NCBI GenBank assembly: GCA_048013815.1
Contig: CM106586.1
Coordinates: 5,518,001 to 5,582,000 of the forward strand
Direction of reading: 5' to 3'
Length of the DNA: 64,000 nt
Source of the DNA: Setoptus koraiensis
Taxonomy: Eukaryota > Animalia > Arthropoda
This document shows, in pieces, positions 26,269-43,870 of this stretch (position 1 is its first letter; each line of letters starts with the position of its first letter). Below the pieces are notes generated by a model that saw only the letters and a program-made list of their open reading frames with translations, had not been told where the DNA came from and did not search any database. Both the position numbers and the translations under genes were made by a program.

Positions 26269-28099
26269 ATGCATGTCTCAGTGCCCGATACTAGGGAGGT
26301 TAAAATACCTCAATCATCCCCTTTTCTACTATATAATATTCATATCAACGGTTTATACCATTGCTCGTTAAGATACAAGCAGTTGTTACATCTACACTCG
26401 CAGCTATGTAAAAGATTTGGATCTTATTATTTGCCATCATTTCCATCTAAAAAATTATTACCCTTATCATTAATACAAGTTGAAGATAGGAGATTACAAT
26501 TGGAGAAATACTTACAAAATATAAGTCAAGATAAAACTATTCGTAACAGCGACATATTCAATTTATTTTTATTAGAAGCACAACGGGAAAGTGCTCAAGC
26601 TACTAGTACAGAAGTATTATTAGAAGTGGAATTAGTCAATGGACAAAAGATTAGACTTAATATTATATCGCACGACTCAACAGATGCAATATTGGCATCA
26701 ATGTGTCGAGCTTTGGGATTAAATGAGCGCTGTCACGCTTATTTCTGTCTTTGCCTATGTGGTTATGATGTAATCAAAGATAAATTGATTATGAAACGTA
26801 GATTATGTTGCTTCGAGTCACCTTTTCTAACTCTACAAACTGCCAATCAAACAATGTCATCTAATACACCCTCTACAATAGCAAAAGCTAACTTCACATC
26901 ATCTGTGAGCAACAATCATAGTAATAATAATATCAATTGCAAAAAAGATCACTATAATTATGTTAAGGGGACACATCAATCTAATGATCATAATCAAGGA
27001 ACATTCACTACACATCGAATACTTTTGAGGAAGTCCTATTGGGATCCAATTTACGATACTTGCGCTTATTTAATTGATGATCGGAAAGCTCTGAATTTAT
27101 TATTTATTCAAACTGTTTACGATGTTAAGCATAATTTGATACATATCGATGAAGAGACATACAATCAATTGGAAACCTTTCTTGCGAACGATGCCGAAAG
27201 AGAGTATGTACTATTAGCTCGGACACTTAAATTCTACAACTATTTGCACTTTGAACCATGCATAAGTGATTATCCGAGATCAGACACAAAAGTCATCATA
27301 TCTGTAGGCAATCGAGAATTAAGCATGCAAGTACTATCACCAAATAATTTCAGTGATGATCACACCCCATCCAATAATCAATTGCGCACAACAACTTCAT
27401 TTGGAGGTGGTAATCTACGTGTTGGAGCAGTTCGACCAGTGAAATATTACAATAGTCAGAATATAGTGGAAGAAGAATACAATTTTAAGATACCACACAT
27501 AAGATGCTGGCGTCTAACTTCTATCACCCCATCAAATGGGAGTTGCAATTTTTCATCGTTGTCAAACCACATGAATCAAGCAAGCATATATAGTCAGCAG
27601 CAACAACAATATGAGTTGTCATTTGAGTATCTTATAGCCAAAGACACTCTGAAATGGATAACAATATCTAGTGATCAAGCTATATTTATCAGTGTCTCTA
27701 TTCAGGAGGTAGTGGACGAGCTAGTGTCTAAGCGTGATGGTCTACCATTCAGAGGATCTAGCAAACCGGCTATTTCTGCTAAACACCCAGGACTTTTTAC
27801 TTATATGGATCGTGGAGGCTCACAACGTGATGTTGTAACAACTAAAGATCAATCTACAGCTCTAGAATATCTAGCACATCAGCACAGTACAACGCACGGT
27901 TCCTCCACTTTCGATGTATCGGTAAGAATGTTTTTGTAGTCAAAATGCAACCTAGAGCAATCGTTTTTTACTTTGCACAATATTCTTAATATATTTACTT
28001 TGTTTTCCATGTCCCTACTTTTAGGCTGTAAAGACCAAGGCGCCTAGATCATTTATCAATGATGCATTCGAGAGTGGAATTGGCGATGATGATCTCTAG
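26269..28099 (+). CDS. SNX17: Sorting nexin-17 (PX-FERM); exons 26269-27921, 28025-28099
   Basis: N-terminal PX domain (YNIHINGLYHCSLRYKQL...RRLQLEKYLQ), FERM-like region (LRKSYWD, IRCWRLTS, WITISSDQAIFIS). The intron 27922-28024 leads to the diagnostic end NDAFESGIGDDDL*. Confidence 0.95.
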
Positions 28100-28520: not shown

Positions 28521-30440
28521 CTAATCGTCCAAATCCTCAATGCAGGGTATGGAATCTTTCCTCGGTCGTCCCTTAGGTTTTGTTGGCGAAACTTTACTTC
28601 CACCCATCATGATCTGTGATAGTGAATAGATGACCAATTGGTAGTGATAACGGCGAGAAAAAAACCCTATCTCAATGGCTGGAGCGATGAAAACTAATAC
28701 ATACCTGTTTTTTCCATTTCATTCTCCTGTTCTGTTATGCAAGAATGGAAAATAGGATTTTATTTGTGGTTAGAGTTAGCTAAGATGTTATACTAGTGTT
28801 CCTATTACTAACTTACTATTATTAGGGTATTACTATTACGGTGAATAGATATCGACAAAAGAAACTAGTTGTATGACACTAGAAAAGAATGAGATTTTGA
28901 TGAGAGATAACGAGAAACGGTTTATTTTTCACGCACTCAACCACTTACTAACAACCAGTAGAGATTGTACCATCACTTACGCTCATATTCAATTCTCTAT
29001 CTATTATGTAAACAGCTTCTTTAATTTATACTAGCCGGTGATGACATAATAGGTTTAGCACGTGATATATGGTCTCTATTCATGCACGTATTGCGCGCAA
29101 TTACAATGTAGTGAGTTTCTGTTGTAGTTACACAATTTTGTTTCACTTCATTTGTCGAGATCGTTATCATGAAATGTTATAGTGTGGAGACTAGAAATGG
29201 GAGCAAGAGTAAAGATTTGATCGATCTCATTGTGTTTTTGGGGTCTCATTCGAACACCAAACGTTATTCTTGTGACGAGAAGTTTCTACGATCAGGAAGA
29301 GTTTACTAGGCACTCAAGTTTGTTGGTACAACTATCTGAAATAAGTGGAAAAGAAAGAATGCATATCTGCGACCGCACATATATCTTTTTCCGTTCTTTG
29401 TGTCAAATCTTTTGTCATCGTCACTTATAGTGAGGAGATGCGTAAAAGTCAAAAATAAACCAGAATGAGTTACAAAACAATTTCTCAAAGTTGCATGCAC
29501 GATGCTTCATTGTAAACCATTCTTTATCATCGTTCACGACAATTTATCATCACAGGGCCATATCTTGCTTTCGTGCTTTCGTGAATCATCATCACAATGT
29601 CCAACAAAGGCTCCATGATGATATTATCTTTCTTTGAAGTCAAACATTGTGAGCTGATAATGACTTGATGTAAGTCATTTTGTTCATTATATTGAGCAAA
29701 CTAATTCAGTGTCAAATGGCGCGACTCGCGCCAGTGATTGTTCAAACTTTGCAAATGGTAGTCTCGCTCTCACTTACCTGGTACCAAGTCTTTACTTGTA
29801 ATTGGCTTAGATTCAACAATTTGGCAATTTTGATTCTGTCGGAAGTGGTTAGATATTTGTTACTGTCGAAGCGCCGCTCCAGACCAATCAATTGATACTC
29901 ATAGAATATTGTTCGATTGCGTCTTGATTGTAGAATAAGATCTTGACTATTCTTCGCGACACAGCTTTTAGTTGTTGGTATCTCGCTCCTGTTGCGATTA
30001 ATTATTTCGCTGTTATCTGATGAGGTTATTAACGCAAGTGGTTGATTATTCGAATCTGTGTAACAATTACCAGCCAAATGATTCGCACCACTCACTACTG
30101 CATATTGTCCGGTGTTACCGATGAATGACATTTGCTCGACATTGTCATAATTGATTGGCGAACAATTTGCCGCAAATATGTTGTAGATTGCTCTACTTTC
30201 ATCTAAAAGTTTGGAACTTCCATGGTGTAACTGAATGTTTGGTTGTTGATGTGCCTTAATCAAGTTGCTTGTTGAATATTTTCTTAAATCGATTTCTTTG
30301 AATGTTGCGCTGTTGATTTGACAAACTGACTCTAACGAACTAAAGTTCTTTGACATTGGTTTACGTCCTTTCTCGGATCCTAATCCTAATAGGTCGCGAA
30401 TCAAAAACGATCTATGAGGACTTTCCTTCAGATAATCCAT
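28521..30440 (-). CDS. BARX: Barx-family homeobox protein; exons 30440-29778, 28731-28705 (27-nt microexon), 28613-28521 (260 aa)
   Basis: eh1-like SFLIRDLL; homeodomain [19 protein letters not shown]...[11 protein letters not shown] | NRRMKWKKQ | [23 protein letters not shown]. The last block matches the Barx-specific [15 protein letters not shown] tail. All splice sites are GT-AG, phase 0. Confidence 0.88.
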
Positions 30441-31119: not shown

Positions 31120-34100
31120 CTACTCTGATTCGCCAGACTCTTTCTCGTCTGTTATCACCGGTAAATTGGTTGATGTGGTAGATTGTTGTTGGTCCATGTC
31201 CTTAGATTGGGTAACTGTAGTGTCCTGGGTTACTGTTGCATTATCTTTGATTTGAATTTCTGATTCTCTGGTATCTAGTAGCACAGGTGTCACTGTTAAG
31301 TTAGCACTGCTCGGTGTAGCTGAAGTCTGGATTGAGGTTGAATACTGGGTCTCGGCCACAGAGACAACCGGATTCACGTCATTATTTACACCATTATTCT
31401 CTTTAGATTTTCGGAACATATTACTTCCTGAGTTATATAGGTGGCTGGATATCTGACCAGAGGAAGTTCCATATAGAGCAACTTTCGGACTAGAAACGGC
31501 ATAATGGGAGCTCGAAGGATCTTCATGATAAAGAGAGTGAAATGTTTATGTGATTAGAAATAGTCACGATTTCTGGAAGAAAAAGATGGAACAACAAAAT
31601 TCAAAAGCATAGATTCTTACCACTGAACATCGATTGTTGAGGATTCTGGTAAAACTTAGGTTTTGGATGAATAGGTGGAGGTTGTGTAGAAGCTGGATTA
31701 TTAATTGTTTTAGGATCCTCTGTGATAGATATCCAATCGGTATTGGAATCATTAAGGTTGCCAATGTTGATTGGTGACTTGCTATAGTGTACACTATCAT
31801 GAGCTCCAACTATTCCATATGGGTTCGACGAGACGGTGCTCGCATATATCGGAGCATAGCTGCGGTTATCAATGGCGGGTGTAAGATTTTTGGTAGTAGT
31901 TGCCTGCATTTTCAATGATGGTTCTTGGTGGTTATTTTCTTCGATATTGTCTAGTGATGCTGCTTCAGAATCATTAGCTGTTTTTCTTCGTTGATTTTGA
32001 TGACGTTTAATCTTTCTACTTCCTGCCATCATGGACATATCATCTTCATCTGAAGAATGCGACGAGGCTAGTTCGTAGTTGGCTGGTCTCAGACGTTCAT
32101 TGTTGGTAATACTCGTAGCTAAAGATTCGTTTCCATCTGTGGTAGTTGTTCCGAGTGCATATTTATCAGATACATTTTGACTTTTGCTATCATAATGCTG
32201 GTGATGCTGACCGCTGGTTTTACCATTGTACATGTGTTCATTATTTTGATCGCGGTGATGCGAAGAACGATGATGATGATGATGGTGATGATGATGTCTG
32301 GATGTTTTCTTATGGTGATGATTTCTTCTACTTCTATGACGTTTAGAACGTGAGCGTCCGTATGCACCGGCATCTACACTAGACAGATTCCTCGATTGAT
32401 TGTAATGATCATCGTCGTCAACTAAATGGTCAGTCTGATCGGCAGCGTAACCTGCCACTTGATATGGACTGGTCGAGGATGTATTTGTTGTGGTTGATCT
32501 ACTTGTCGTGGAAGCGGTAGATATAGTCAATTTGTTGTTAAATATATCCGTGCAAGAACTTTGGAATCCACCACCAGCTGGGCCTGTTTGGAGAGGCTTC
32601 GACAGGCCATAAGGATGCGGTAATAAAGTATTCTGAGTGCGTTGTAGGTATGCTGCGGTATTCTGATCTATATGGCTCGATCCAAGAGGGTTGTTGTAAA
32701 GCGCAGAGTTATCCTCATAAAAAGGAATCTTTTTACCTTGAAACTTGAGCCAGCTAACGTAGAGATTGTAGCGAATTTGTTTATCCAATAAACAGAATGT
32801 CAACACCAACACTACAGACTTTATTAAAGTCAAGATGGGAAATAAAGCTGGATAATCTGGTATGGCTTCATTGACTGAGTAGATTGCGGCTAGCCAATAA
32901 GCAGTAATAAGTGGTAATAATATCAAAGATGTTGTCCATAACAATTGTCTGAGATTCTGATGATCACTCTGAAGAGTTTCTTTTATCTGTTGCGATTTGC
33001 GCCAGCTCAAAATCAATGTAAATGAAGTAGCTAAAATAAGACCAAATATTGGTCCGAACATACTCCAAATGATGCTTTCATGGATAGAGAGCCAACAGAA
33101 TAGATAGTTGCCGAATTGTTCGATTCGCAGACCTACAGCTATACTGACAAATACAGCAGGAACAGCGAAACCCATGATGTGATAAAATTTCATTGGTCCA
33201 TGATTTATATCTCGTATCTCTGTTAGCATCCTCAATAAATGCGTTGAGTTGATAAATATCCAACAAAACAAGCTTATGGACAGATAGTGCAAAAATATAG
33301 CTACCATTTTGCATTGATATTCTTGATAAGTTACCATGATTGAAGCGCGCGACCTAGATACCAGTAGTATTAGAGCTTCCATGAATATTAGAACTAAAAT
33401 CATGTTACGATTAATACTATTACTATTGCTGTTAATGCTGTGGCCTCTTATACATGTCATTATAAAGTAGGCAATGCTTAATAATATAATAGATATTATC
33501 AGGCACAACTGTAGCCCAATATCTCTATTATTTATGGGCCCTTCACCCCAGATTGCTTCAACGTTCGCATCATCCATCAATACCGTGACAGCACCTAAAT
33601 GATCACATGTACAATTGATGTAGTCGTGTCGAGACTTAAGTGAATGATCGTGAGAGATACCACGTAACTCACAACCTCGAGCCGAGAATCTTCCTGAGTG
33701 ACTCGATTGCAAAGATAATGGATCGGATGTTGATTCTTGATTTGAGTTTTGGTGGTGCTTGGGTACCGTATTTCTAGAGTTGATCGATTTAGAAGAAGGT
33801 GGAGCTTGGTGACCTGGAGGTGTGAAATTCCATACTACACACTGAGGTCTAGTCTTGCCAGAGCCTTTGGTTACTTTCAAAATATAACTCACTTTAGGTT
33901 GTAGGTTGCGTGACATAAAGTCTGTACTGTTGGCCGCCTTCATAGTGAGCCAAACAACAGGTGTATTAGTTGTGGCTGAATTTCCTAAGCGATGTTGCAC
34001 AGTTCCGTCGTCATGGCCTGGTAGTAAGGGGCCCAGTGTTTGGTAGATTGAATACACTACCAGAGCAGAAGGCGTTCTAGGTAAGCGATATTGATCATTT

Positions 34101-37100
34101 TGAGCACGCTTCAACGGTAGTTCATTTAATGAACTGCCACCAATAACGAGATCTCTTTTCGAACGATAATTTATACCAGATTGGCCTTGTCCTGATTGAT
34201 AGTAGTTGATAGATTCGTGTGGTAAGTCTAATTTCAGTGCCCGGAGTGGAATTACAGCCTTGGTTACCTCGTCGGCATATAATCTGTCTGGAGCATAATT
34301 GTTATATTTTGGTATAGCGATTGCTGGCGAGGCATCCAGGCCTGGCACACTGTAATCAAGATAAATAGGAGATCCGTCTTGATTGTATGGTCGATTAGAA
34401 GAAGTTGTGATGCCTGCCATATTGTTCTTGTCTACAGATTCATTTTTAATTTTGGCACTACCAGGCGATGACTTCAAGGAGTCCAATAACTGATCTGTAG
34501 AGATGGTGTCCATACCGAAAGTAAAATATTTACTGGCCACCTCAAAAGGCTGTGTGAATGTGTCCAATTGGTTATCGATTAAAACTCTACCATACTGATC
34601 AAAAATTTTCAACAATTGCTCGGCTCCCCCGTTAGATGACATCTTTGATATTCTTGACCAATCTTCAGTATGCTTAGGATCCAGAAGAAAACTGGTTGAT
34701 TCTACTAAGTTTCTAATATACATTCTGTCGTGCTTGTGGGCTAAGTTCGATCCGTTTTGGTGTGTTTCAAAATTTATAAGATGGTACAACAATCTGAATG
34801 CCACAAACAAATCACTCCCATAGACAGTTACACCATTTTCTAGCTGCTGATTTGCTTCTGCTGTAGTTTGATTGAATGCCTGACGTAAATTATTAGCCAA
34901 CTTCGTGGCTTGATTGGTATTTAAGTGAAGGGGATCTTTCTCGAGCAATATGACCTGAGGATATAAGTCAAAGAAACTAGGGCTGATACAATTGAATAAG
35001 TCTACCTTCTGCCAGCCATTAGACTCGTCACATACTCTAGATGCATTACCACGTGTGTTATTTGGACATGGTCCTGTAGCAGTCTGCTTGTAAGGAGTTT
35101 TAGGCCACCATATACCGTCGGAGTAGCTTTTTGGACAGGCATCGTATATAACTTCACACCCTCTCAATGTGACCTCGGCGTAAGCACTCGGGCATGTATC
35201 ACAACGGCGCCCAATGACACCAGGTCGACATCTACACTGGCCTGTAGTAGGGTGACACTGACCACCTAATGAGCCGATTGTATAGCAATCGCAAGAGATA
35301 CATCGATCGCTAGATTCGGGTTGGTAATGGTTGATTTTACAATTACATTGACCTGTAGTTTTGTGGCAATCACCATCAAAGCCTTTAGACTCGTCGCATT
35401 GACATGGACCGCATATGGAAAAATTTCCTCCGGATACGGGGTGACCCCACCAGTTTGAAGGACATCTCCTGGTCAATGAATGCTCACAATGTCTCCCACT
35501 TCGTGTGGGGTCGCAATCGCATTGATAACCGCTATCAAATGAAGCAAAATGACCATGTAAATCTAAGAGTGTGTTCTGCTGATTTGCAGTGCCCAGTCTA
35601 TGATTGTTTTGCTGTCGATTGAAATTCGAACTGTCAATTGGGTTTTCATAGACCGCGTTCTGCTCCATAGGAGATACCTGCAAAGAATCGGCTGCCGGGC
35701 GACATTTTGAACCTGTGCCTTGGCAGAGGTTTAATGAGCAGACAGGTACACATCCTTGCTCTGAGGCCACGAATCCGGGTTGACAAACGCATTTATGCTG
35801 AGACATTCCATATTGAACACAACTTGCGTTTTCCATACATGTGCTCGATAAACAACTATCCAATTGCTGGCAGCCTATTTCGACATTACGTTCTTCTTTG
35901 TTAGCTAACAACCAGTTACTTGCTGACTGGCCTGCTATATCGATTTCTTGTATGCAACCGACGAAACTTGGGGAGCTCATTTGTGACTGATAGCCCGTGA
36001 GCGTCGAACTTATCGTTGTTGTGGCCGTTGATCGATTATAAGTATTGTAGTATGTACTCGAGTCCTGACTCACTAATGGCTCTATATTGTCGGAAATACC
36101 TGGTGCTACAGTATTCAAGTCTCTGCTGTTTAATCGTGCATGAGTTGGGCCTGTAGAGGTTGAAGCAGCTCCGACAATGATTTTAGATATATATAGAGTG
36201 GTTAAATCCATAGCACCATTCTCGAGCTCTTTTTCTATCTCGTATTGGCCATAATCTAGTACTATCCCAACAATGTTACCGATGTTATTATTCATAATTC
36301 GAGTTTGCTTATTCATTGAGATATTCAGCTGGACCGAGTGCCATTGCCCATCATCAACACCAGTTCCTCCAGCAAGTGACAATATCTGATTTTGATAAGA
36401 AAATCTCACCTCTCCGTCCACAACATCCAGTGCAATGACGTTAGGTGAGGAACTTGAATCGGTTGTAGATTCGAGATATACTCTGATCAAAGCTCCATTT
36501 GGTTGGATAGTGCGGAAATTCAAGCGCACGTACCAGGGCAACAGTATTGATGGCGACTGACCTTTTGGCACATAAGTCACATGAGAGTTCCCGCCAAAAC
36601 GTCGCACCCCGCCACCAGTCTGATTTGCCACTTGACTACAGTCATGCCCATAGTACCCCTCGGCACATGAACAACTATATGTACCCCAAGCGTCGTGGCA
36701 AGTTCCTCCATTTCGGCACGGCTGGACATGGCAGAAAGAACGTTTATCTTGACAACCAGCCAGAGTACCATTATTAGCGACAAACTGGTTCAAATCGACC
36801 AGTTGGTGATCTATATATAAGTCACTAATACAACCTGCGAATGGCGTCCCGGATTGCACTTGAAATTTCGTTGGCAATAAGGGCAGTGCGCCTAACTGCA
36901 ATGGACTGGACAGATCTAAAAACCTGTGACATGATTCGATTTCTTTAGAGCATCTTGATTCCAACTCCATTTGTGTTGTGTTTGAGCATCGCCTCCACGA
37001 ACTTATCTGTGCATGATGTTCGATAGTTGGTATGGTTGAGGGTTGCTCTCCATACTGGTTGTTGGGTGACCATGATGACTCAGTCGAAGTGGACATAGCT

Positions 37101-40018
37101 GAGGATTGTTGCTGCTGATCATGCTGAAGTTTAGCTAGTTCTTGGTCTAAAATTGGATCGCAGTCATCTAGTAGTAGAGTGGCTTGTCTATCTAAATAGT
37201 CTATGGACACTTTATGCCAATTGCCATCAGATACAGTTATCCTTGGAAGCGATACAGTTGAAACATTCGAACCGAGTGAAAATGAGAACTTTAGCCTTGA
37301 ATCCGTCAATTCTAGAGCTATAAAATCGTTTCGATCGTTATAGCGTCCATTATATAATAGTAGCGCATCAGACTGACGGGTTGCGAATCTAAGAGATATA
37401 TGGAGGCGATTACGTTGGCGCAAGCTTGGTAGAGTTAGATATGATCCGCGTGGAAATGATCTAGCACGCAGTTGGCATAATTCGTTGGACCAAGCTGACG
37501 TTTGGCAACCTTGACATTTGAATCCACCAATAAAACCTGTTGGCACAACACCAAACGTTTTGCCCGATAGTTGATGATTACCTATCTGTGGTGGTACGTA
37601 TATAGAAGTCTTGTTGAGATTTACACACTTTGTGCCGCCAGCACATATTCCAGGTTGTTGCTTTCCAACAGCATATAGTGGGCTAATAGTAGCTTGCGAT
37701 AATTGGTAAGAGTCCATTAATTGACATGAGCTATTTGTGAAGCTAAGTTCACATTTGCGGCCGATGAAACCTGAGCGGCATTCACAAGAGTATCCTAGCT
37801 CATGTCTGTGACAAATACCTCCATTCTGACATGGGTTTGAGAAACATTGATTGATCTCAACGTCGCATTCATATTTTGAGTGCTCTCCGGTGAAAGTTTG
37901 GGGACACTCGCATGTATAACTTAGAAGTGGTGTGACAGGTTTAAATAGCATTGTTCGAGTTGAAATAAACGGCTTGGATGCATCTCCGAATTTATACGTC
38001 TGTTGACAACGTTGATAATTGAGACATGGCTCCCTTACACAAAAACCGTCCTCGAATGGTAGTACTTGCATACCCATCTTCTGAGACAGTAAAGGTCTAT
38101 TCAAGTATATCCGTTCTTGCAAATATTGGCTAGAGTAATAGGCTTCAGTATCGCGGCTGTCTGGTAGTCTTGCGCTGAGGCTCACATTTAGTATTAGATT
38201 ATTGACCGAGTTTATCGAACCACTAATATTGCTTATAGTATTAGTTGGGTGATACTCTTGAATATCGAACAAAACTATATTATCAGCTCCACATGCGAGT
38301 ATCTGGGCTAGACTTCCCATGAATGAATCATACTTGTTCATCATGAATTCATCCCGGCTGATGTTATCCAATTGCATCATTATACTGTTTTGTAACATAT
38401 TTTCTGTGATTAAATTGACAACTAATAAACATTGAGCAATGACTTCAAATTGTCCATCAGATACCAAGATCTCAAATACTGCTCTCATCGGTACGTTGCT
38501 GTTGAGACTAGGACTAAGTTGAATCTCTCCGGTGGTTGCATTAATTAAGATCCAAAGGGCATTGTTACCGCTAACAATTGTGTAAGTCAATTTATCTGAA
38601 ATATCTGCATCATAAGCTGGTACCCTTCCTATCGGTGAGGTGGGAAAATGACTGCGATTATTGTTGAATATGATGGAAAAATCATGCAGTTGAGGTTTGT
38701 TATCATTTTCATCCATGATCTCTATTTCTATATCTATGTCGGATTTAAGCGACATTGACGATGCTCTAATCACAAGATTATATTTGATCTTGCCGGATTC
38801 GTAATTGAAATCCACCATCGACACAACTTCTGCTTTATCTGATTGATCTCTTTGGATGAGACTGAACGATTTAGCATCGGCACCGCCGCTTATTTCATAC
38901 ACAATTCTGGCATTTTCGCCTTCATCTAAATCCGTGGCCATCATAGTGGCTACCACAGTTCCGATGGGAGAATTTTCCGATACCATAAAATGTAGCTTTT
39001 CCAGTGTTACTTTTTCTCCATCGGGACTCAACCATTGCGGAGCATTATCATTGACATCATCAACATAGATGGTAATGGCTACGGACCCATTGAGCGGTGG
39101 CTGGCCCCTGTCTATGGCTAGTGCGACTAGTTCATACTTGGAGTGTTGTTCACGATCAAGTAATTTATTTGTTCTAATAACACCCGAATTTGGATCAATG
39201 GTGAACGTTCCTTCGCAATCATTTCCGCCGGCAAAAGTGTATTTTATTTGAGCGTTTAGACCGACATCGTTGTCCAATGCGTGAACTTTTAAAACTGGCG
39301 TATGAATGGGTACACTTTCCGAGATGTTTTGGCTCAACTGAACAGTTGTCGCACTAGTAGAACCAAATGTTACATGATTGTGTTGTTGCTCGGAATTAGA
39401 TTGAGAATTCGATTGCGTAAATATTGGCGGTGAATCATTGATGTCTGTGACCTCAACGTAGACTTTTGCTGTGTCGGTTTGACGTGGCTGCCCATTGTCA
39501 GACACAGTGATTATCAACGTGTAACTAGAGACACGTTCCCTGTCTAGAGGTTTGTTGGTTGTGATGGCTCCTGTTTTACTATCTATTTTGAATTCAGCAT
39601 CATTGACAGGGGGAAATTGTTGCTGTTGTTGCTGTTGCTGCTGTTGTTGTTCGAACAATTGATTGATTGAGCTCAACGATTGGGGCGATTGATAGCTCAA
39701 TGTTGTGATAAATCTATGTTCGAGTATTGAGGACAAAGAATAAGATAGTTCGTGTCCGTCTAAATCCGTGGCGGACACATTGACCACCGGATAGTCCCTG
39801 TCCTTGTCCTCGGGTATGCTGGCGTCATAACTGTTTCTATCGAATATTGGTGGTCTGTTTGAGATGGCATTGGGCTTGATTTGGTAATCGTCTGAGCTTG
39901 TGACAAAGCTAGAATTGCTAGCTATCAATAGTAATAATGTAAAATAATTGACTAGATGAAGGTGCGAGATGCTCCTGAGAAGTTTAGTATTTAATTTTGG
40001 CATCATGTCGTGTGTCAT
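31120..40018 (-). CDS. stan: Flamingo/starry night (CELSR) adhesion GPCR with a reduced cadherin array; exons 40018-31621 and 31520-31120 (2932 aa)
   Basis: Signal peptide, cadherin repeats (LDRE, DxNDxxP), flamingo box, EGF and two laminin-G domains, laminin-EGF, hormone-receptor domain (WWPKT), GAIN/GPS, 7TM, and the cytoplasmic LASSHSSDEDD motif. A phase-1 intron at 31620-31521 joins the 31120-31419 ORF as the last exon. Confidence 0.96.
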
Positions 40019-40377
40019 TGTTGCTGTTGCTGGTCTGGTGCAATCGTCCGGATGGTAATAGTGGCTCGGTTGATTGTGAGGTCCATATCGTTGTGGTCAC
40101 ATATTATTGTATTCATGCAAACCCAATGCGCCCGGCAACACGATGCAAATGAATTTGTTGTCAGGCAGTTGTATACTAAATGAAATTGATTTACTTGCTG
40201 CGTGGAATTATAATTGATAATTGTCGCAAATTGCTAAATGGTTGATAATAAAATTGATCTGATTGGCCGCATAATAGCCACAGTTGTGCGTATAGGAATG
40301 TTCAAGATTGCATAAATAAGTGGTTGAGTTCATGAGCAAGTTGACCAAGAAACGAAAATTTTGATGAAGAAAAAGGA

Positions 40378-40470
40378 TTGTGTGTGTGTGTTTGTTCTAT
40401 TTCGACAGTTCGATCTCTATAAATCCTTCAAAACAAGTGTGTGTGTGTCTGTGTGTGCGTGTGTGTGTGT
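40378..40470. repeat. Interrupted (GT)n microsatellites upstream of flamingo
   Basis: Runs of TGTGTG seen directly. Confidence 0.85.
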
Positions 40471-42766
40471 GAGTACTGCTACAAAAATAACTTGTCTCTT
40501 GAGATTACTCAACTCACCAGAGCCAGTGCGCCAGTGCAATTGATGCTGCAGCAGGGGAATGAATTGAATAAGAATGAGGGAATCAAATCGAATCAATCGA
40601 CGTGTGCGAGAACTTGTGTGAGCCGCTAGTGGCCACAACAACAACAACAAGTGCCTGTTCTGCTATGTCTCGTGTACTGTGTGTGTGTGCGCCAGCAACA
40701 GACAGAGATCATTGGACTCAAGTTTCCAACTGGTGAACCAAGAAACGAATAATGATGCAGACTTAAGTCTGCGCCGGTTGCGGGCACTATCAGAGGCGCT
40801 CAGAGGAAACTTAATCTTGGCCATCTCACGGACAGTCAAAGCGGTCGGCTCTTCTTAGAACACTCGACCACTGCTAATGGGGCAGCTGCAACAGGTACCA
40901 CACATTGGGCAGCCCTGCAGCACGCCCTCTCGAGAAGAAGCCGACAACCAACGACGCTTGCCTATGCCTTAGATGGCTTACATGGCGGAATTGACCGGTC
41001 CACAACATGTCGGTGTTATTCTTATTGCGGGTACGACAGTGTGTTAGCACGCAGCATCACGAATGCATGCGTGTCCGTCTGACCGTCCGTTCGCTCGTTA
41101 GTCGCAACAACGGCTCAGGGCAAGTGAAGTTCGGCGGAATCACCATCTTCAAAACGGCCAACTGCTATATACCTGCCTATGGCTTATTATGTCCAATCTT
41201 TTTTTAATTTTTCGTTCATGTAGCAGTGCATGTGTGTGTGTGTGAGTTATAAACAAGACGACCAATACATGTACTGTAAGCGGCAACTGTTAAAATAACA
41301 GCAATTGTTCGGACCGGACTGTATGTTAAACTTGGACAACTAATATAAACTGACAACAAACTATAGTTATAACATTTAAGTCCATGATAATGCCGCTTGC
41401 TTGTTATCTACTCAGGATGTATTATGTTCTCGGATTGGCTCAGCACAAACACAATCCATTGTTGGCTCAACCTTCGTTGATCCAAGCCCCACTAAGAGTG
41501 GCCAAGATGTCTATAAATTGGACTCAACGGTTGGCTCGTTGAACTCAATAATCATGGCAATAATGACTGTGTGATCATCACCATCACTTTGATGCTACCA
41601 CTTACTCCACGATAACTATGATGATGATATCAAATTCTATTGTGTGTTTGTGTCTACTGTAGAACCTGTCGAATGTCTGTCTCTCTCTCCCTCTCTTTGT
41701 ACACCCAACTTAGGTCCTATTCTCCTGGCGAGCAAGTGTATTACACAGGCTCACAACAATCAAGGAGCAACGGCTTCTATTGCTCTTGGAACAGTCCCGA
41801 TGGTTACATGATTTTGAGCAAAATCGCATGACGCACCAACAGACTATAAACTAAAATGGCGTAGATTTACAACCTTGCGAGTCGTTTCTAAATACTTCAC
41901 TAATGGCTCAAATCATTGCTGCTGTTATTGTCCTCCCTCTCACACTATAGACCATCCAACTCATTTCAGACTCATGAAGTATGTGATATCTTTGTATTGT
42001 AATTGTACTCTGTACGTAAAGCTCTGGTACGAGCAAGTACAAATTATTCTCCACTGGCTTCAACACAAAGATGAGCAATGAGACATGTTAAGTCCATCAT
42101 CGTTTCAACACTTCATGCTATATGTGCTAAATTTTGAAGTGAACAATTGCGAAAGAACAACACGTGCCTGTCGTGAACAATATTATGCCTATCATTGTGA
42201 AGCCCACTTAGAGAGTGGTCATTAATCAACATACATCAATTGTTACGTAAAATTTTCGCCCTCTGGCGAACACACTGGTGCTATTGTTCTTGTGCATGGA
42301 AACAATCTTTTTAATCGGTTTTGCAGTTTATGTGCCGCGTTCAGTAAATATAGTATGGATGCGCCTTCCATCTATCAACAACTGTACCCTGATTAACTAA
42401 CGCAATTATTTTCAAGCCTAGATTGTGCTTACTACGGATATCCTTGTAGTTTACACATAGAACAGGGAAGACATCCTACCAAGATCATTTAAATGATGCT
42501 CTCCTAGTGTCACATCAAATTGTCACGATCAGAGGAGCAGCAATCTGAGACATGTTTCACTTTTGAATAGAATCTTATCTAAGATAAGTTATCTGCCATC
42601 AAATCTTCAGCGCTTACTAAGTCAAAAAGTGATATGCTTTCGATCAAAATAGAAGGAAAACAACTTTTGCGATCAACTACTGTCTTACTAATTTAATTAA
42701 GGCTACAGAAAGTTACTTTTTAACAGTGGAACTTTTAATGGGTTATGGTTGTCGAAGAGTTCGACA

Positions 42767-43870
42767 TCAGCCGGTTACTTTCTTTCTATTGAAATGGTCG
42801 GATTGAGGAAGCATAATTTGCGATTTGCCACATCTACCAGCCCATGTTGGGCAGTCGATAAATCTTAGCTCTGGGTCATAACAAATAAATATACCGCTCA
42901 ACAGTGGTATGGGTGAATTATGTTGCTTTTCGCATACAAATCTGACCTGTTTTTTGTTTGTCAAGTTCATTACACTTTTTCGTAGGTCTTCAATGAAGTA
43001 GAGTTTCGAAGAAGACGGTGTAATTCCGCCAGAGGCGAGATTTCTCTTCAATGCAAGACTTTTCACAATTGCCAAGGTGGAAGCGAAAAAGTTATATTCG
43101 CCGCGTAGTTTAGCAGTATCACGAGCGCACGTTCCGTGCTTGAGCCACTCATGTTTCCAGAATCCTTGACTAGAGCCGAACAGAGAGGGCCAGTGGTCAT
43201 CCAGATCATATCGTATAGGGTTAAGTGCATTTATATTGAATTCGTTATCGAAGCAACAAAATTCTGGTGACACATCTCCGCCATTTGGATTACTCTTTGT
43301 AGCCCACATACCATGTATGGTGAAATCTTCTGGTTCTTTGATACACTTATCGGGCGAGGTGGTGCAGTAACCAGGCGGCCATTGAAGTGCCAATGAGTAA
43401 TATTTGGCATCGTAATCATTAGAGCACCCTCGGTCTCTATATGGCGATGGTGATCTATTTCTAGGTCTGCTGGCTTGGGGGGGTTGATTTTGGATAACTG
43501 TCGAGTATTTGGCCATATCTTTGTACCATTGAGACGCTTTGACCTCTTCCGGGGATCCCCAGCCAGAGGCTCGAGATAGCCTGCTGAGACCCGTAGGTGT
43601 TTTTCCTGGTGGTCCAATGAGACTTGGCCAGTCTTTTGCATCGGTAATACTGGGACTAACATTTTTTGGTTTAGGCGCTAATTGCTTTCTTGCTGACTGG
43701 CCATTCCAAACATCGGAACCGATGGCGCCGATGTTCGAACTGACTTTATTGGTAGTTTCGGTGCCTAGGCAGTGGTTAGTCTTGATATAACTCGCTAACA
43801 CACAAGCTATAACGACCAGATGTAAAAAGTGGGTATAGTATTCTGAAGACATGTTGTTGTGTTTCTTCAT
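42767..43870 (-). CDS. RNASET2: Secreted ribonuclease T2 family protein with a long N-terminal extension, intronless
   Basis: Signal-like segment (FLHLVVIACVLASYI); LALQWPPGYC; CAS I FTIHGMW; CAS II FWKHEWLKHGTC. Confidence 0.93.
   Translation of the reverse strand: MKKHNNMSSEYYTHFLHLVVIACVLASYIKTNHCLGTETTNKVSSNIGAIGSDVWNGQSARKQLAPKPKNVSPSITDAKDWPSLIGPPGKTPTGLSRLSRASGWGSPEEVKASQWYKDMAKYSTVIQNQPPQASRPRNRSPSPYRDRGCSNDYDAKYYSLALQWPPGYCTTSPDKCIKEPEDFTIHGMWATKSNPNGGDVSPEFCCFDNEFNINALNPIRYDLDDHWPSLFGSSQGFWKHEWLKHGTCARDTAKLRGEYNFFASTLAIVKSLALKRNLASGGITPSSSKLYFIEDLRKSVMNLTNKKQVRFVCEKQHNSPIPLLSGIFICYDPELRFIDCPTWAGRCGKSQIMLPQSDHFNRKKVTG

What the first reader, a model, noticed from the sequence alone, without database searches (positions are those of the whole stretch)
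38405..39859. Miniaturised Flamingo: 4 cadherin repeats instead of about 9, with a chimeric EC1/EC6 first repeat
Seen: one uninterrupted ORF runs from a signal peptide (in-frame stop upstream) through only four cadherin repeats into the flamingo box. Repeats 2-4 carry features I recall for CELSR EC7 (YTFAGGNDCEGTF), EC8 (ENSPIG) and EC9 (IGRVPAYDADISD). In repeat 1, the first half (YSLSSILEHR) resembles Fmi EC1 (YSMVSLLDSR) and the second half (YTLIITVSDNGQPRQTDT) resembles EC6 (YTLAITARDNGIPQKSDT). A 40-aa polyQ insert (about 39600-39715) sits exactly at the junction. Established: Drosophila Stan and vertebrate CELSR1-3 have about nine repeats, which mediate the homophilic trans-adhesion of planar cell polarity. 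Inference: an in-register internal deletion removed about five repeats, implying a shorter intercellular bridge and a changed homophilic interface, possibly tied to body or cell miniaturisation.
Basis: partly seen in the sequence, partly recalled or inferred. Interest (0 to 1): 0.78.

Follow-up and report, generated by a model that had tools for sequence, protein, structure and literature searches.

The report
Four-repeat Flamingo with hybrid first repeat
A gall-mite relative's Flamingo cell-polarity receptor keeps four of the usual nine cadherin repeats, the first a tightly conserved splice of halves of repeats 1 and 6, and related mites keep seven or two, so they form a natural deletion series for asking how much of this adhesion rod is needed.

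Summary

- **Gene.** Window 31601-40018 (-) is one intron-less 2,805-aa ORF with full Flamingo/CELSR architecture but only four cadherin repeats.
- **Repeat identity.** Profiles for EC1-EC9, built from 14 full-length orthologues, classified 784 of 784 held-out half-repeats correctly. They assign repeats 2-4 to EC7, EC8 and EC9.
- **Hybrid repeat 1.** Its N-half is EC1 and its C-half is EC6. Each scores above every non-member half and within the true-member range.
- **Junction.** It lies in the C-D loop and carries a 37-aa insert with a Q11 run, not a 40-aa polyQ.
- **Not an artefact.** A sister species (88% aa identity, dS about 0.8) has the same layout on one independent contig with conserved synteny. 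The hybrid repeat and insert are the most constrained part of the protein (dN/dS 0.006-0.04, against 0.079 overall).
- **No missing exons.** No other cadherin-coding DNA exists in the 64 kb.
- **New here.** Truncation recurs across eriophyoid mites: Fragariocoptes has EC3-9, and 20 eriophyid-like species including Aceria tosichella have only EC8-9.
- **Untested.** Function, expression and a second locus.

The scan has separately noted shrunken Dachsous and Fat cadherins elsewhere in this genome. I did not check those notes.

The parts
31601..40018 (-). Complete intron-less Flamingo/stan/CELSR gene, 2,805 aa plus stop
   Evidence: ORF list; Pfam architecture; nests among eriophyoid Flamingo orthologues
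40097..40099 (-). In-frame stop 26 codons upstream of the start codon
   Evidence: Stop-to-stop frame is 31604-40096; translation of the upstream DNA
39869..40018 (-). N-terminus with a signal-peptide-like hydrophobic stretch (aa 22-32); no long pro-region and no furin site, unlike the reference orthologues
   Evidence: Kyte-Doolittle maximum 2.27 at aa 22-32; comparison with EC1 upstream regions of the references; fastest-evolving part, dN/dS 0.80
39710..39868 (-). Repeat 1, N-half (aa 51-103): derived from EC1, strands A-C
   Evidence: EC1 profile 42.0 bits vs next best 26.5. This exceeds all 352 non-EC1 N-halves (maximum 32.5) and lies within the true EC1 range. Best pairwise match is EC1 in 9 of 10 species. 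dN/dS 0.039. AF2 pLDDT 84-90
39599..39709 (-). 37-aa insert in the C-D loop at the EC1/EC6 junction (aa 104-140), including a Q11 run at nt 39617-39649
   Evidence: Unaligned to either parent profile; 36 of 37 residues conserved in the sister species despite dS of about 1.5, dN/dS 0.007; low-confidence loop or helix in the AF2 model; short-read contigs break here
39434..39598 (-). Repeat 1, C-half (aa 141-195): derived from EC6, strands D-G plus the native EC6-EC7 linker
   Evidence: EC6 profile 70.5 bits vs next best 52.0 and EC1 48.9. This exceeds all 348 non-EC6 C-halves (maximum 61.1). Best pairwise match is EC6 in 11 of 11 species. 59% identical to Tetranychus EC6 against 41% to its EC1. 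dN/dS 0.006
39047..39433 (-). Repeat 2 = EC7 (aa 196-324), with a fast-evolving low-complexity insert at its start (aa ~201-230)
   Evidence: EC7 129 bits vs 89; core dN/dS 0.020, insert 0.35; insert disordered in the model
38702..39046 (-). Repeat 3 = EC8 (aa 325-439)
   Evidence: EC8 119 bits vs 44; both halves agree
38339..38701 (-). Repeat 4 = EC9 (aa 440-560), the CELSR-type membrane-proximal cadherin leading into the Flamingo box
   Evidence: Pfam PF23592 4.6e-27; EC9 169 bits vs 23
35339..38338 (-). Flamingo box, EGF and LamG block (aa 561-1560)
   Evidence: Pfam Laminin_G_1/2, EGF, hEGF; dN/dS 0.093
32759..35338 (-). Laminin-EGF, HRM, GAIN (GPS reads HL|G) and secretin-type 7TM (aa 1561-2420)
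   Evidence: Pfam EGF_laminin, HRM, GAIN, 7tm_2; GPS motif; 45-51% identical to eriophyid orthologues and 39% to the oribatid one
31604..32758 (-). Cytoplasmic tail (aa 2421-2805), low complexity with a His9 run
   Evidence: Translation; homopolymer scan; dN/dS 0.068

Best explanation
This is the single-exon Flamingo (starry night / CELSR) orthologue of an eriophyoid mite.

In its lineage one in-frame genomic deletion, inside what outgroup mites encode as a single exon, removed everything from the C-D loop of EC1 to the C-D loop of EC6. The result is one hybrid cadherin domain. Strands A-C and the free N-terminal tip come from EC1. Strands D-G and the native calcium-binding linker to EC7 come from EC6. 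The hybrid is followed by intact EC7, EC8 and EC9. The long pro-region before EC1 is also gone.

The rest of the receptor is complete: the EC9-to-GAIN module, the 7TM and the tail. The gene is functional. The hybrid repeat, its 37-aa loop insert and EC7 are the most strongly conserved parts of the protein.

Shown: the architecture, the parentage of each half, conservation in a sister species, purifying selection, and recurrence of N-terminal repeat loss in related mites (7, 4 and 2 repeats).

Inferred (about even odds): the three free repeats (hybrid, EC7, EC8) still make a calcium-dependent antiparallel contact between neighbouring cells. This contact would be much shorter and would use a remodelled interface, because EC4 and EC5, which human CELSR2 needs for bead aggregation, are absent. 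The EC9-GAIN-7TM module would signal as usual.
For: - Architecture.
- Repeat parentage: EC1-EC9 profiles from 14 orthologues; classifier 784 of 784 correct on 44 held-out proteins; observed scores lie outside the non-member ranges and inside the member ranges; pairwise scores favour EC6 in 11 of 11 species and EC1 in 9 of 10; alignment; crossover interval aa 103-150.
- Fold: the AF2 model (30-row alignment, mean pLDDT 81.5) gives seven strands for the hybrid repeat, and the model matches four-repeat cadherin crystal structures at E about 1e-33.
- Independent confirmation: sister-species contig L001 has the same layout, conserved downstream genes and alignable upstream DNA.
- Selection: dN/dS 0.039, 0.007, 0.006 and 0.020 for the EC1-half, insert, EC6-half and EC7 core, against 0.079 overall, with dS about 0.8.
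- No other cadherin-coding DNA in the window; an RNase T2 gene bounds the locus 2.7 kb upstream.
- Orthology and the lineage pattern.
- Outgroup mites encode EC1-EC8 in one exon.
- Calcium-binding motifs are intact at all three linkers.
[quoted passage not shown] EC1-8 form an antiparallel dimer, EC1-4 suffice, and EC4 is essential and EC5 needed for full activity in CELSR2 (PMC10160967).
Against: - No RNA run holds the stretch, so expression is not shown.
- In this species, short-read contigs from three studies all stop at the CAG/CAA repeat that encodes the polyQ, which is the junction itself. Only the window's own assembly and the sister species bridge it.
- Against single vertebrate CELSR1 sequences, the C-half ties between EC6 and EC1 (33.2 vs 32.8 bits). 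The N-half's raw identity to Tetranychus EC1 and EC6 is close (39% vs 35%). The assignment therefore rests on arthropod profiles and scored alignments.
- A genome-wide search for a second Flamingo locus was not possible.
- The adhesive role is inference only. The deleted EC4 and EC5 are the repeats that human CELSR2 needs for aggregation.
Confidence: 0.8

Rival explanations
1. The short ectodomain no longer bridges cells. The receptor works only in cis, through the EC9-GAIN-7TM module with Frizzled or Van Gogh, or binds a different, heterophilic partner. The conserved hybrid repeat and insert serve that other role. The structural history is the same as in the best explanation; only the function differs.
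For: EC4 and EC5, needed for CELSR2 bead aggregation, are deleted (PMC10160967). Most eriophyid relatives keep only EC8 outside the compact module. The insert is conserved as strongly as a binding site would be. The A. lycopersici genome paper reports fat, dachs and four-jointed absent in an eriophyid (PMC7738191).
Against: Calcium-binding linker motifs are intact. The extremely low dN/dS of the hybrid repeat and EC7 fits a retained adhesive rod equally well. Nothing tested here separates the two roles.
Confidence: 0.3
2. Repeat 1 is one whole canonical repeat (EC1 or EC6). The deletion fell on domain boundaries, and the mixed signal comes from fast divergence or from adaptation of an EC1 to pack against EC7.
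For: The whole-repeat scores tie (EC1 86.1, EC6 84.4). The lineage evolves fast. Vertebrate single-sequence comparison is indecisive.
Against: True EC1 C-halves prefer EC1 by at least 18 bits, and true EC6 N-halves prefer EC6 by at least 14 bits, in 44 held-out proteins. Here the preferences are reversed by 22 and 24 bits. The EC6-like residues are spread over strands E-G, not only at the linker. The score profile of the C-half mirrors that of Fragariocoptes EC6.
Confidence: 0.06
3. Assembly artefact: five repeats were collapsed at the CAG/CAA repeat in this assembly.
For: No short-read contig of this species bridges 39613-39654.
Against: The flanking contigs run 26 and 32 bases into a 42-base gap, so they overlap within the repeat. 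The sister species carries the same junction on one contig, where the Gln run is interrupted by His. The reading frame and the fold register are preserved. The junction region is under purifying selection between the two species.
Confidence: 0.03
4. This is a derived paralogue, and a nine-repeat Flamingo elsewhere in the genome is the true orthologue.
For: The whole genome could not be searched. The scan's notes for this genome are silent rather than negative.
Against: The protein and its sister-species copy sit inside the eriophoid Flamingo clade (SH-aLRT 95-100). All 105 relatives found by the GAIN/7TM search look like one gene per species, and no eriophyoid long form appears beside a short one. 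Synteny is conserved with the sister species.
Confidence: 0.05

Closest known systems
Arthropod Flamingo / starry night, e.g. Tetranychus urticae T1K1W7, Oppia nitens and Dermatophagoides farinae 'protocadherin-like wing polarity protein stan'
   Same: Orthologous by gene tree. Same order of EC7, EC8, EC9, Flamingo box, EGF/LamG, HRM, GAIN and 7TM. 37-39% identity over HRM-7TM.
   Different: They have nine repeats, a pro-region with a furin-type site, and the calcium-poor EC5-EC6 hinge. Here EC1's second half through EC6's first half, the hinge and the pro-region are all absent, and repeat 1 is a hybrid with a 37-aa loop insert.
Vertebrate CELSR1-3 (structures 8D40 EC1-4, 7SZ8 EC4-7, 8VY2 ectodomain)
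   Same: Same domain grammar. The modelled N-terminal 521 aa superposes on four-repeat CELSR1 fragments (TM by target 0.61-0.73). The CADH9-GAIN module parts are all present.
   Different: CELSR adhesion needs CADH1-8 (PMC12038025). In CELSR2, EC1-4 suffice, EC4 is essential and EC5 is needed for full activity (PMC10160967). The mite protein lacks EC2-EC5 entirely. The GPS reads HL|G.
Two-repeat Flamingo of eriophyid mites (Aceria tosichella 'CELSR2' in UniRef, P0128, and 19 unnamed proteins P0121-P0140)
   Same: Closest relatives: 45-51% identity over HRM-7TM, also intron-less, same EC9-to-7TM module, same HL|G GPS in the two checked, P0121 and P0128.
   Different: They go from a signal anchor and a short linker straight into EC8, so only EC8-EC9 remain and there is no hybrid repeat. 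An 82-kb contig shows no cadherin-coding DNA in the 10 kb upstream.
Fragariocoptes setiger stan (GCA_019968535.1, P0194)
   Same: Eriophyoid orthologue, single ORF. It has inserts at the same two loop sites: the EC6 C-D loop and the start of EC7.
   Different: It keeps EC3-EC9 after a signal-like stretch, seven repeats in all. It lacks the EC1 half that the window keeps and keeps the EC3-EC5 that the window lacks, so the two truncations are independent events.
Engineered CELSR truncations (CELSR1 deltaCADH1-8; CELSR2 EC1-n series)
   Same: The same question is asked: how many cadherin repeats, and which ones, does the receptor need.
   Different: Those constructs are laboratory N- or C-terminal truncations cut at domain borders. 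This is a natural internal deletion with a mid-domain, in-register junction that has survived long enough for dS of about 0.8 between species.

Membership tests
Flamingo / starry night / CELSR (ADGRC adhesion GPCR) | Secretin-type 7TM preceded by HRM and GAIN domains | tested here: met
   Pfam 7tm_2 5.8e-32, GAIN 6.9e-12, HRM 4.3e-08
Flamingo / starry night / CELSR (ADGRC adhesion GPCR) | EGF / laminin-G / laminin-EGF block between the cadherins and HRM | tested here: met
   Laminin_G_2 4e-33, Laminin_G_1 5.3e-29, EGF 9.3e-12, EGF_laminin 2.5e-08
Flamingo / starry night / CELSR (ADGRC adhesion GPCR) | CELSR-type membrane-proximal cadherin (EC9) next to the Flamingo box | tested here: met
   PF23592 4.6e-27; EC9 profile 169 bits
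Flamingo / starry night / CELSR (ADGRC adhesion GPCR) | Orthology: groups with arthropod stan genes in a gene tree | tested here: met
   Nests in the eriophyoid clade within acariform mites, SH-aLRT 95-100. The order among the three eriophyoid lineages is unresolved (p-AU 0.35).
Flamingo / starry night / CELSR (ADGRC adhesion GPCR) | Nine tandem cadherin repeats EC1-EC9. This is typical of bilaterian members; I treat it as characteristic rather than defining. | tested here: not met
   Four repeats and three linkers. Relatives have 7 or 2.
Flamingo / starry night / CELSR (ADGRC adhesion GPCR) | Calcium-binding motifs at the inter-repeat linkers | tested here: met
   The PE-, DxD-, DRE-type and DxNDxxP motifs are present in the hybrid repeat and EC7. 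In EC8 the DRE position reads DFN, and its other three motifs are present. Sequence level only.
Flamingo / starry night / CELSR (ADGRC adhesion GPCR) | GPS autoproteolysis consensus HL|T/S (variable within the family) | tested here: not met
   Reads HL|G at aa 2140-2142, as in P0004, P0121 and P0128
Flamingo / starry night / CELSR (ADGRC adhesion GPCR) | Homophilic trans-binding and partnership with Frizzled / Van Gogh in planar polarity | not testable with these tools
   Needs aggregation assays and genetics
Fat / Dachsous / protocadherins (considered because they dominated the first search) | Single-pass membrane anchor after the cadherin array, with no GAIN or 7TM | tested here: not met
   GAIN and 7tm_2 are present. 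The high scores of Fat-like proteins are sums over many generic repeats at 25-35% identity.

The most novel reading that the evidence does not exclude
Eriophyoid mites are a natural deletion series of the Flamingo adhesion rod, with 9 repeats cut independently to 7, 4 and 2. In the four-repeat form, the hybrid EC1/EC6 domain and its invariant 37-aa loop would have become a new, compact homophilic or heterophilic interface. That interface would replace the EC1-EC5 overlap that vertebrate CELSRs need. If so, planar-polarity bridging could run on a rod about a third of the normal length, set by the much smaller cells and cell contacts of these animals.
Probability: 0.3. Interest if true: 0.82.

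Novelty: new variant of a known kind. Interest (0 to 1): 0.66.

Why it matters
Flamingo/CELSR is among the most conserved adhesion GPCRs, and its nine-repeat rod is treated as a fixed feature. Which repeats are needed has been tested only with engineered human and mouse truncations.

Here evolution has made an internal deletion that removes exactly the repeats (EC4, EC5) that those experiments call essential. It welded two half-domains into one fold and then held the product under the strongest constraint in the whole protein. Relatives keep seven or only two repeats.

This gives ready-made, selection-approved constructs for three questions:
- whether trans-adhesion is separable from signalling,
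- what sets the length of the intercellular bridge,
- whether a mid-domain cadherin chimera folds and binds.

It also adds a core planar-polarity receptor to the picture of protein-level streamlining in the smallest arthropods. The published eriophyid genome paper reports fat, dachs and four-jointed as absent, and earlier unchecked notes of this scan describe shrunken Fat and Dachsous in this genome.

Tried and rejected
- **First word search.** The search on residues 1-640 was swamped by Fat/Dachsous-type proteins. Only P0004 was useful, and the GAIN/7TM search was needed to find orthologues.
- **Structure prediction, too shallow.** A two-row alignment gave a useless model (pLDDT 29.6). A 30-row alignment of rows not flagged gave the usable model.
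- **Solved structures.** A sequence search against solved structures does not discriminate: mouse CELSR1 EC6 33.2 vs EC1 32.8 bits.
- **Exon-boundary origin of the deletion.** Rejected. Oppia nitens encodes aa 1-929 in one exon, and the only intron in the Dinothrombium cadherin region lies before EC1.
- **Weak EC2-like hit upstream of the Fragariocoptes gene.** The hit (11.6 bits) does not read as a cadherin on inspection.
- **Uninformative relatives.** P0146, P0159, P0177 and P0179 begin mid-domain without a signal-like stretch. I took them to be incomplete gene models, not cadherin-free receptors.
- **Per-residue comparison.** The comparison of EC1 and EC6 profiles worked only for the C-half. 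The EC6 profile would not align to the N-half at all.
- **Reads.** Only assembled contigs were on offer and no RNA runs, so neither expression nor a read-level bridge of the polyQ repeat could be shown.
Full report
**What is there**

Window 31601-40018 on the minus strand is one uninterrupted ORF of 2,805 aa. The stop-to-stop frame extends only 26 codons above the ATG, with the stop at 40097-40099. The N-terminus has a signal-like hydrophobic stretch at aa 22-32.

Pfam finds cadherin repeats, the CELSR-type ninth cadherin (aa 436-524), laminin-G, EGF, laminin-EGF, HRM, GAIN and a secretin-type 7TM. That is the full Flamingo / starry night / CELSR architecture.

A search with the HRM-GAIN-7TM part returns only Flamingo/CELSR proteins. 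The nearest are:
- an unnamed 2,803-aa protein at 90% identity (P0004);
- 20 proteins at 45-51%, which include the Aceria tosichella protein;
- oribatid, astigmatid, spider-mite, tick and insect 'stan' proteins at 31-39%.

So the organism is an eriophyoid mite. The scan's index describes this genome as two pieces covered by about 775 windows. That matches the published two-chromosome, 47-Mb Setoptus koraiensis assembly (PMC11920263). This identification is my inference and was not tested.

**Counting and naming the repeats**

Fourteen full-length orthologues align in register on eight inter-repeat linkers, including the non-canonical EC5-EC6 linker. The window protein has three linkers, at aa 192, 321 and 436, and therefore four repeats.

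I cut the reference alignment into EC1-EC9 and built one profile per repeat.

| Segment | Best profile (bits) | Next best (bits) |
|---|---|---|
| Repeat 2 | EC7, 129 | 89 |
| Repeat 3 | EC8, 119 | 44 |
| Repeat 4 | EC9, 169 | 23 |
| Repeat 1, whole | EC1, 86.1 | EC6, 84.4 |
| Repeat 1, N-half (aa 51-103) | EC1, 42.0 | 26.5 (EC6 18.0) |
| Repeat 1, C-half (aa 141-195) | EC6, 70.5 | 52.0 (EC1 48.9) |

*Calibration.*
- On 44 full-length Flamingo proteins not used for the profiles, 784 of 784 half-repeats went to their true repeat.
- True EC1 C-halves prefer EC1 by at least 18 bits, and true EC6 N-halves prefer EC6 by at least 14 bits.
- The observed 42.0 bits exceeds all 352 non-EC1 N-halves (maximum 32.5). 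The observed 70.5 exceeds all 348 non-EC6 C-halves (maximum 61.1). Both lie inside the ranges of true members.

*Checks without profiles.*
- BLOSUM62 local scores put the C-half on EC6 in 11 of 11 species (143-180 against at most 141 for any other repeat). They put the N-half on EC1 in 9 of 10 species.
- The C-half is 59% identical to Tetranychus EC6 and 41% to its EC1.
- The alignment shows the EC1 signatures up to the 'LEHR' that matches the 'LDAR' of the reference EC1s. The EC6 signatures run from 'EFKID' onward.
- The EC6-favouring residues are spread over strands E to G, and the crossover lies somewhere in aa 103-150.

*Weaker points.* A single-sequence search against solved structures ties EC6 and EC1 of mouse CELSR1. 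The N-half's raw identity to one species barely separates EC1 from EC6. The N-half assignment is therefore sound but less strong than the C-half assignment.

**The junction and the fold**

Between the halves sit 37 residues (aa 104-140, nt 39599-39709) that align to neither parent. They contain a run of 11 Gln, so '40-aa polyQ' overstates it.

An AlphaFold2 model of aa 45-565, from a 30-row alignment, has mean pLDDT 81.5.
- The hybrid repeat has seven strands. Those from the EC1 half have pLDDT 84-90, and those from the EC6 half 85-92.
- The insert is a low-confidence excursion with a predicted helix.
- A second disordered insert sits at the start of EC7.
- The model superposes over about 500 columns on four-repeat cadherin crystal structures. 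These include CELSR1 EC1-4 and EC4-7 and protocadherin EC3-6, at E about 1e-33.

The calcium-binding motifs are present at all three linkers. Because the C-half is EC6, the interface with EC7 is the native one. Because the N-half is EC1, the free tip is the native one.

**Real, not an artefact**

P0004 is encoded on a single 16-kb contig assembled independently from another run (L001).
- Its ORF shows the same EC1-half, EC6-half, EC7, EC8, EC9 order.
- Its Gln run is interrupted by His.
- Its downstream homeodomain and SNX17-like genes lie in the same order as in the window. Its upstream non-coding DNA aligns to window 40262-41102 at 71-77%.

Between the two species dS is about 0.8.

| Segment | dN/dS |
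|---|---|
| Whole protein | 0.079 |
| EC1 half | 0.039 |
| Insert (36 of 37 residues identical) | 0.007 |
| EC6 half | 0.006 |
| EC7 core | 0.020 |

The hybrid repeat is the most constrained part of the receptor.

A six-frame scan of all 64 kb with the nine profiles finds no other cadherin-coding DNA. Everything else scores under 8 bits. The next gene upstream, 2.7 kb away, is an RNase T2.

Contigs of this same species from three independent studies match the window letter for letter. All of them break at the CAG/CAA repeat 39613-39654 and at a CA repeat at 40430-40478. The flanking contigs overlap inside the repeat, but strictly the junction is bridged only by the window's assembly and by the sister species. 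No RNA run holds the stretch, so expression is not shown.

**How it arose**

Oppia nitens encodes aa 1-929 (EC1-EC8) in one exon. Dinothrombium has only a 72-nt intron, and it lies before EC1. Exon boundaries therefore do not explain the deletion.

The simplest history is a single in-frame genomic deletion inside one exon. It survived because it happened to join two C-D loops in register.

Fragariocoptes carries a ~28-aa insert in the same EC6 loop. That suggests the loop was already a permissive, expanded site in early eriophyoids. This last point is speculation.

**The wider pattern (new in this follow-up)**

- **Two repeats.** The 20 closest other relatives, including Aceria tosichella, go from a conserved signal anchor and a short linker straight into EC8, so they keep only EC8-EC9. 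On an 82-kb contig the ORF opens 27 nt above the ATG, and the 10 kb upstream hold no cadherin-coding DNA.
- **Seven repeats.** Fragariocoptes setiger has a signal-like stretch followed by EC3-EC9.
- **Gene tree.** The eriophyoid sequences form one clade: Fragariocoptes, then the window lineage, then the two-repeat clade (SH-aLRT 95-100). The alternative order is not rejected (p-AU 0.35).
- **Independent events.** Whatever the order, the seven-repeat and four-repeat forms cannot derive from each other, because each keeps parts the other lacks. The two-repeat form could descend from either one or from a nine-repeat ancestor.
- **Outside the clade.** In the sister clade of unnamed sequences, one protein has nine repeats and another has a signal peptide, a His-rich linker and only EC8-EC9.

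**Likely function**

Established background:
- CELSR1 needs CADH1-8 for cell adhesion, while CADH9-GAIN forms a compact regulatory module (PMC12038025).
- In human CELSR2, EC1-EC8 overlap as an antiparallel dimer. EC1-4 suffice for bead aggregation, EC1-3 do not, and EC5 is needed for full activity (PMC10160967).

The mite protein lacks EC2-EC5 and the EC5-EC6 hinge, yet it conserves its three free repeats more strictly than anything else. I infer one of two outcomes:
- a short antiparallel contact, hybrid repeat against EC8 and EC7 against EC7, with a remodelled interface that may involve the invariant insert (about even odds);
- a shift to cis-only or heterophilic use (about 0.3).

Neither is tested.

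**Novelty**

No paper in the searchable library joins eriophyoid mites with planar polarity. The eriophyid genome paper does not mention Flamingo and reports only the absence of fat, dachs and four-jointed.

This is a new variant of a well-known receptor, not a new kind of system.

Earlier notes of this scan describe shrunken Dachsous and Fat cadherins elsewhere in the same genome. I used them as context only and did not check them.

Noticed in passing
L002:10001-16645 and proteins P0121-P0140: Twenty eriophyid-like Flamingo orthologues, including Aceria tosichella, keep only EC8-EC9 after a conserved signal anchor. An 82-kb contig has no cadherin-coding DNA in the 10 kb upstream.
   Followed up: yes
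L004:2692-13248 (Fragariocoptes setiger): Flamingo with a signal-like stretch followed by EC3-EC9, seven repeats. Its truncation is independent of the window's. Only 2.7 kb of upstream DNA is available.
   Followed up: partly
L005:1436-6622 (P0156) versus P0149: In the unnamed sister clade of the eriophyoids, one protein has EC1-9. Another has a signal peptide, a His-rich linker and only EC8-EC9, an apparently separate reduction to two repeats. The organisms are unknown.
   Followed up: partly
window 33593-33601 (-), aa 2140-2142: The GPS site reads HL|G instead of HL|T/S, as in the sister species and two eriophyid orthologues. The GAIN domain is probably not self-cleaving.
   Followed up: partly
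window 39613-39654 and 40430-40478: Short-read contigs of this species from three studies all end at the CAG/CAA (polyQ) repeat and at a CA dinucleotide repeat upstream of the gene. The coding junction is therefore unbridged in public short-read assemblies.
   Followed up: yes
window 39329-39418 (-), aa ~201-230: A low-complexity insert at the start of EC7 evolves fast (dN/dS 0.35) and is disordered in the model. Fragariocoptes has an insert at the same site.
   Followed up: partly
window 40262-41102: Non-coding DNA upstream of the gene aligns at 71-77% with the sister species despite dS of about 0.8 in the gene. It may be a conserved promoter or 5' UTR region.
   Followed up: no
window 42767-43870 (-), 29712-30440 (-), 27597-28022 (+): Neighbours of the gene. 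An RNase T2 gene lies upstream (Pfam 1e-41). A homeodomain gene and an SNX17-like gene lie downstream, in the same order as in the sister species.
   Followed up: partly
window 32270-32296 (-), aa 2575-2583: A His9 run lies within a long low-complexity cytoplasmic tail that is nevertheless under purifying selection (dN/dS 0.068).
   Followed up: no
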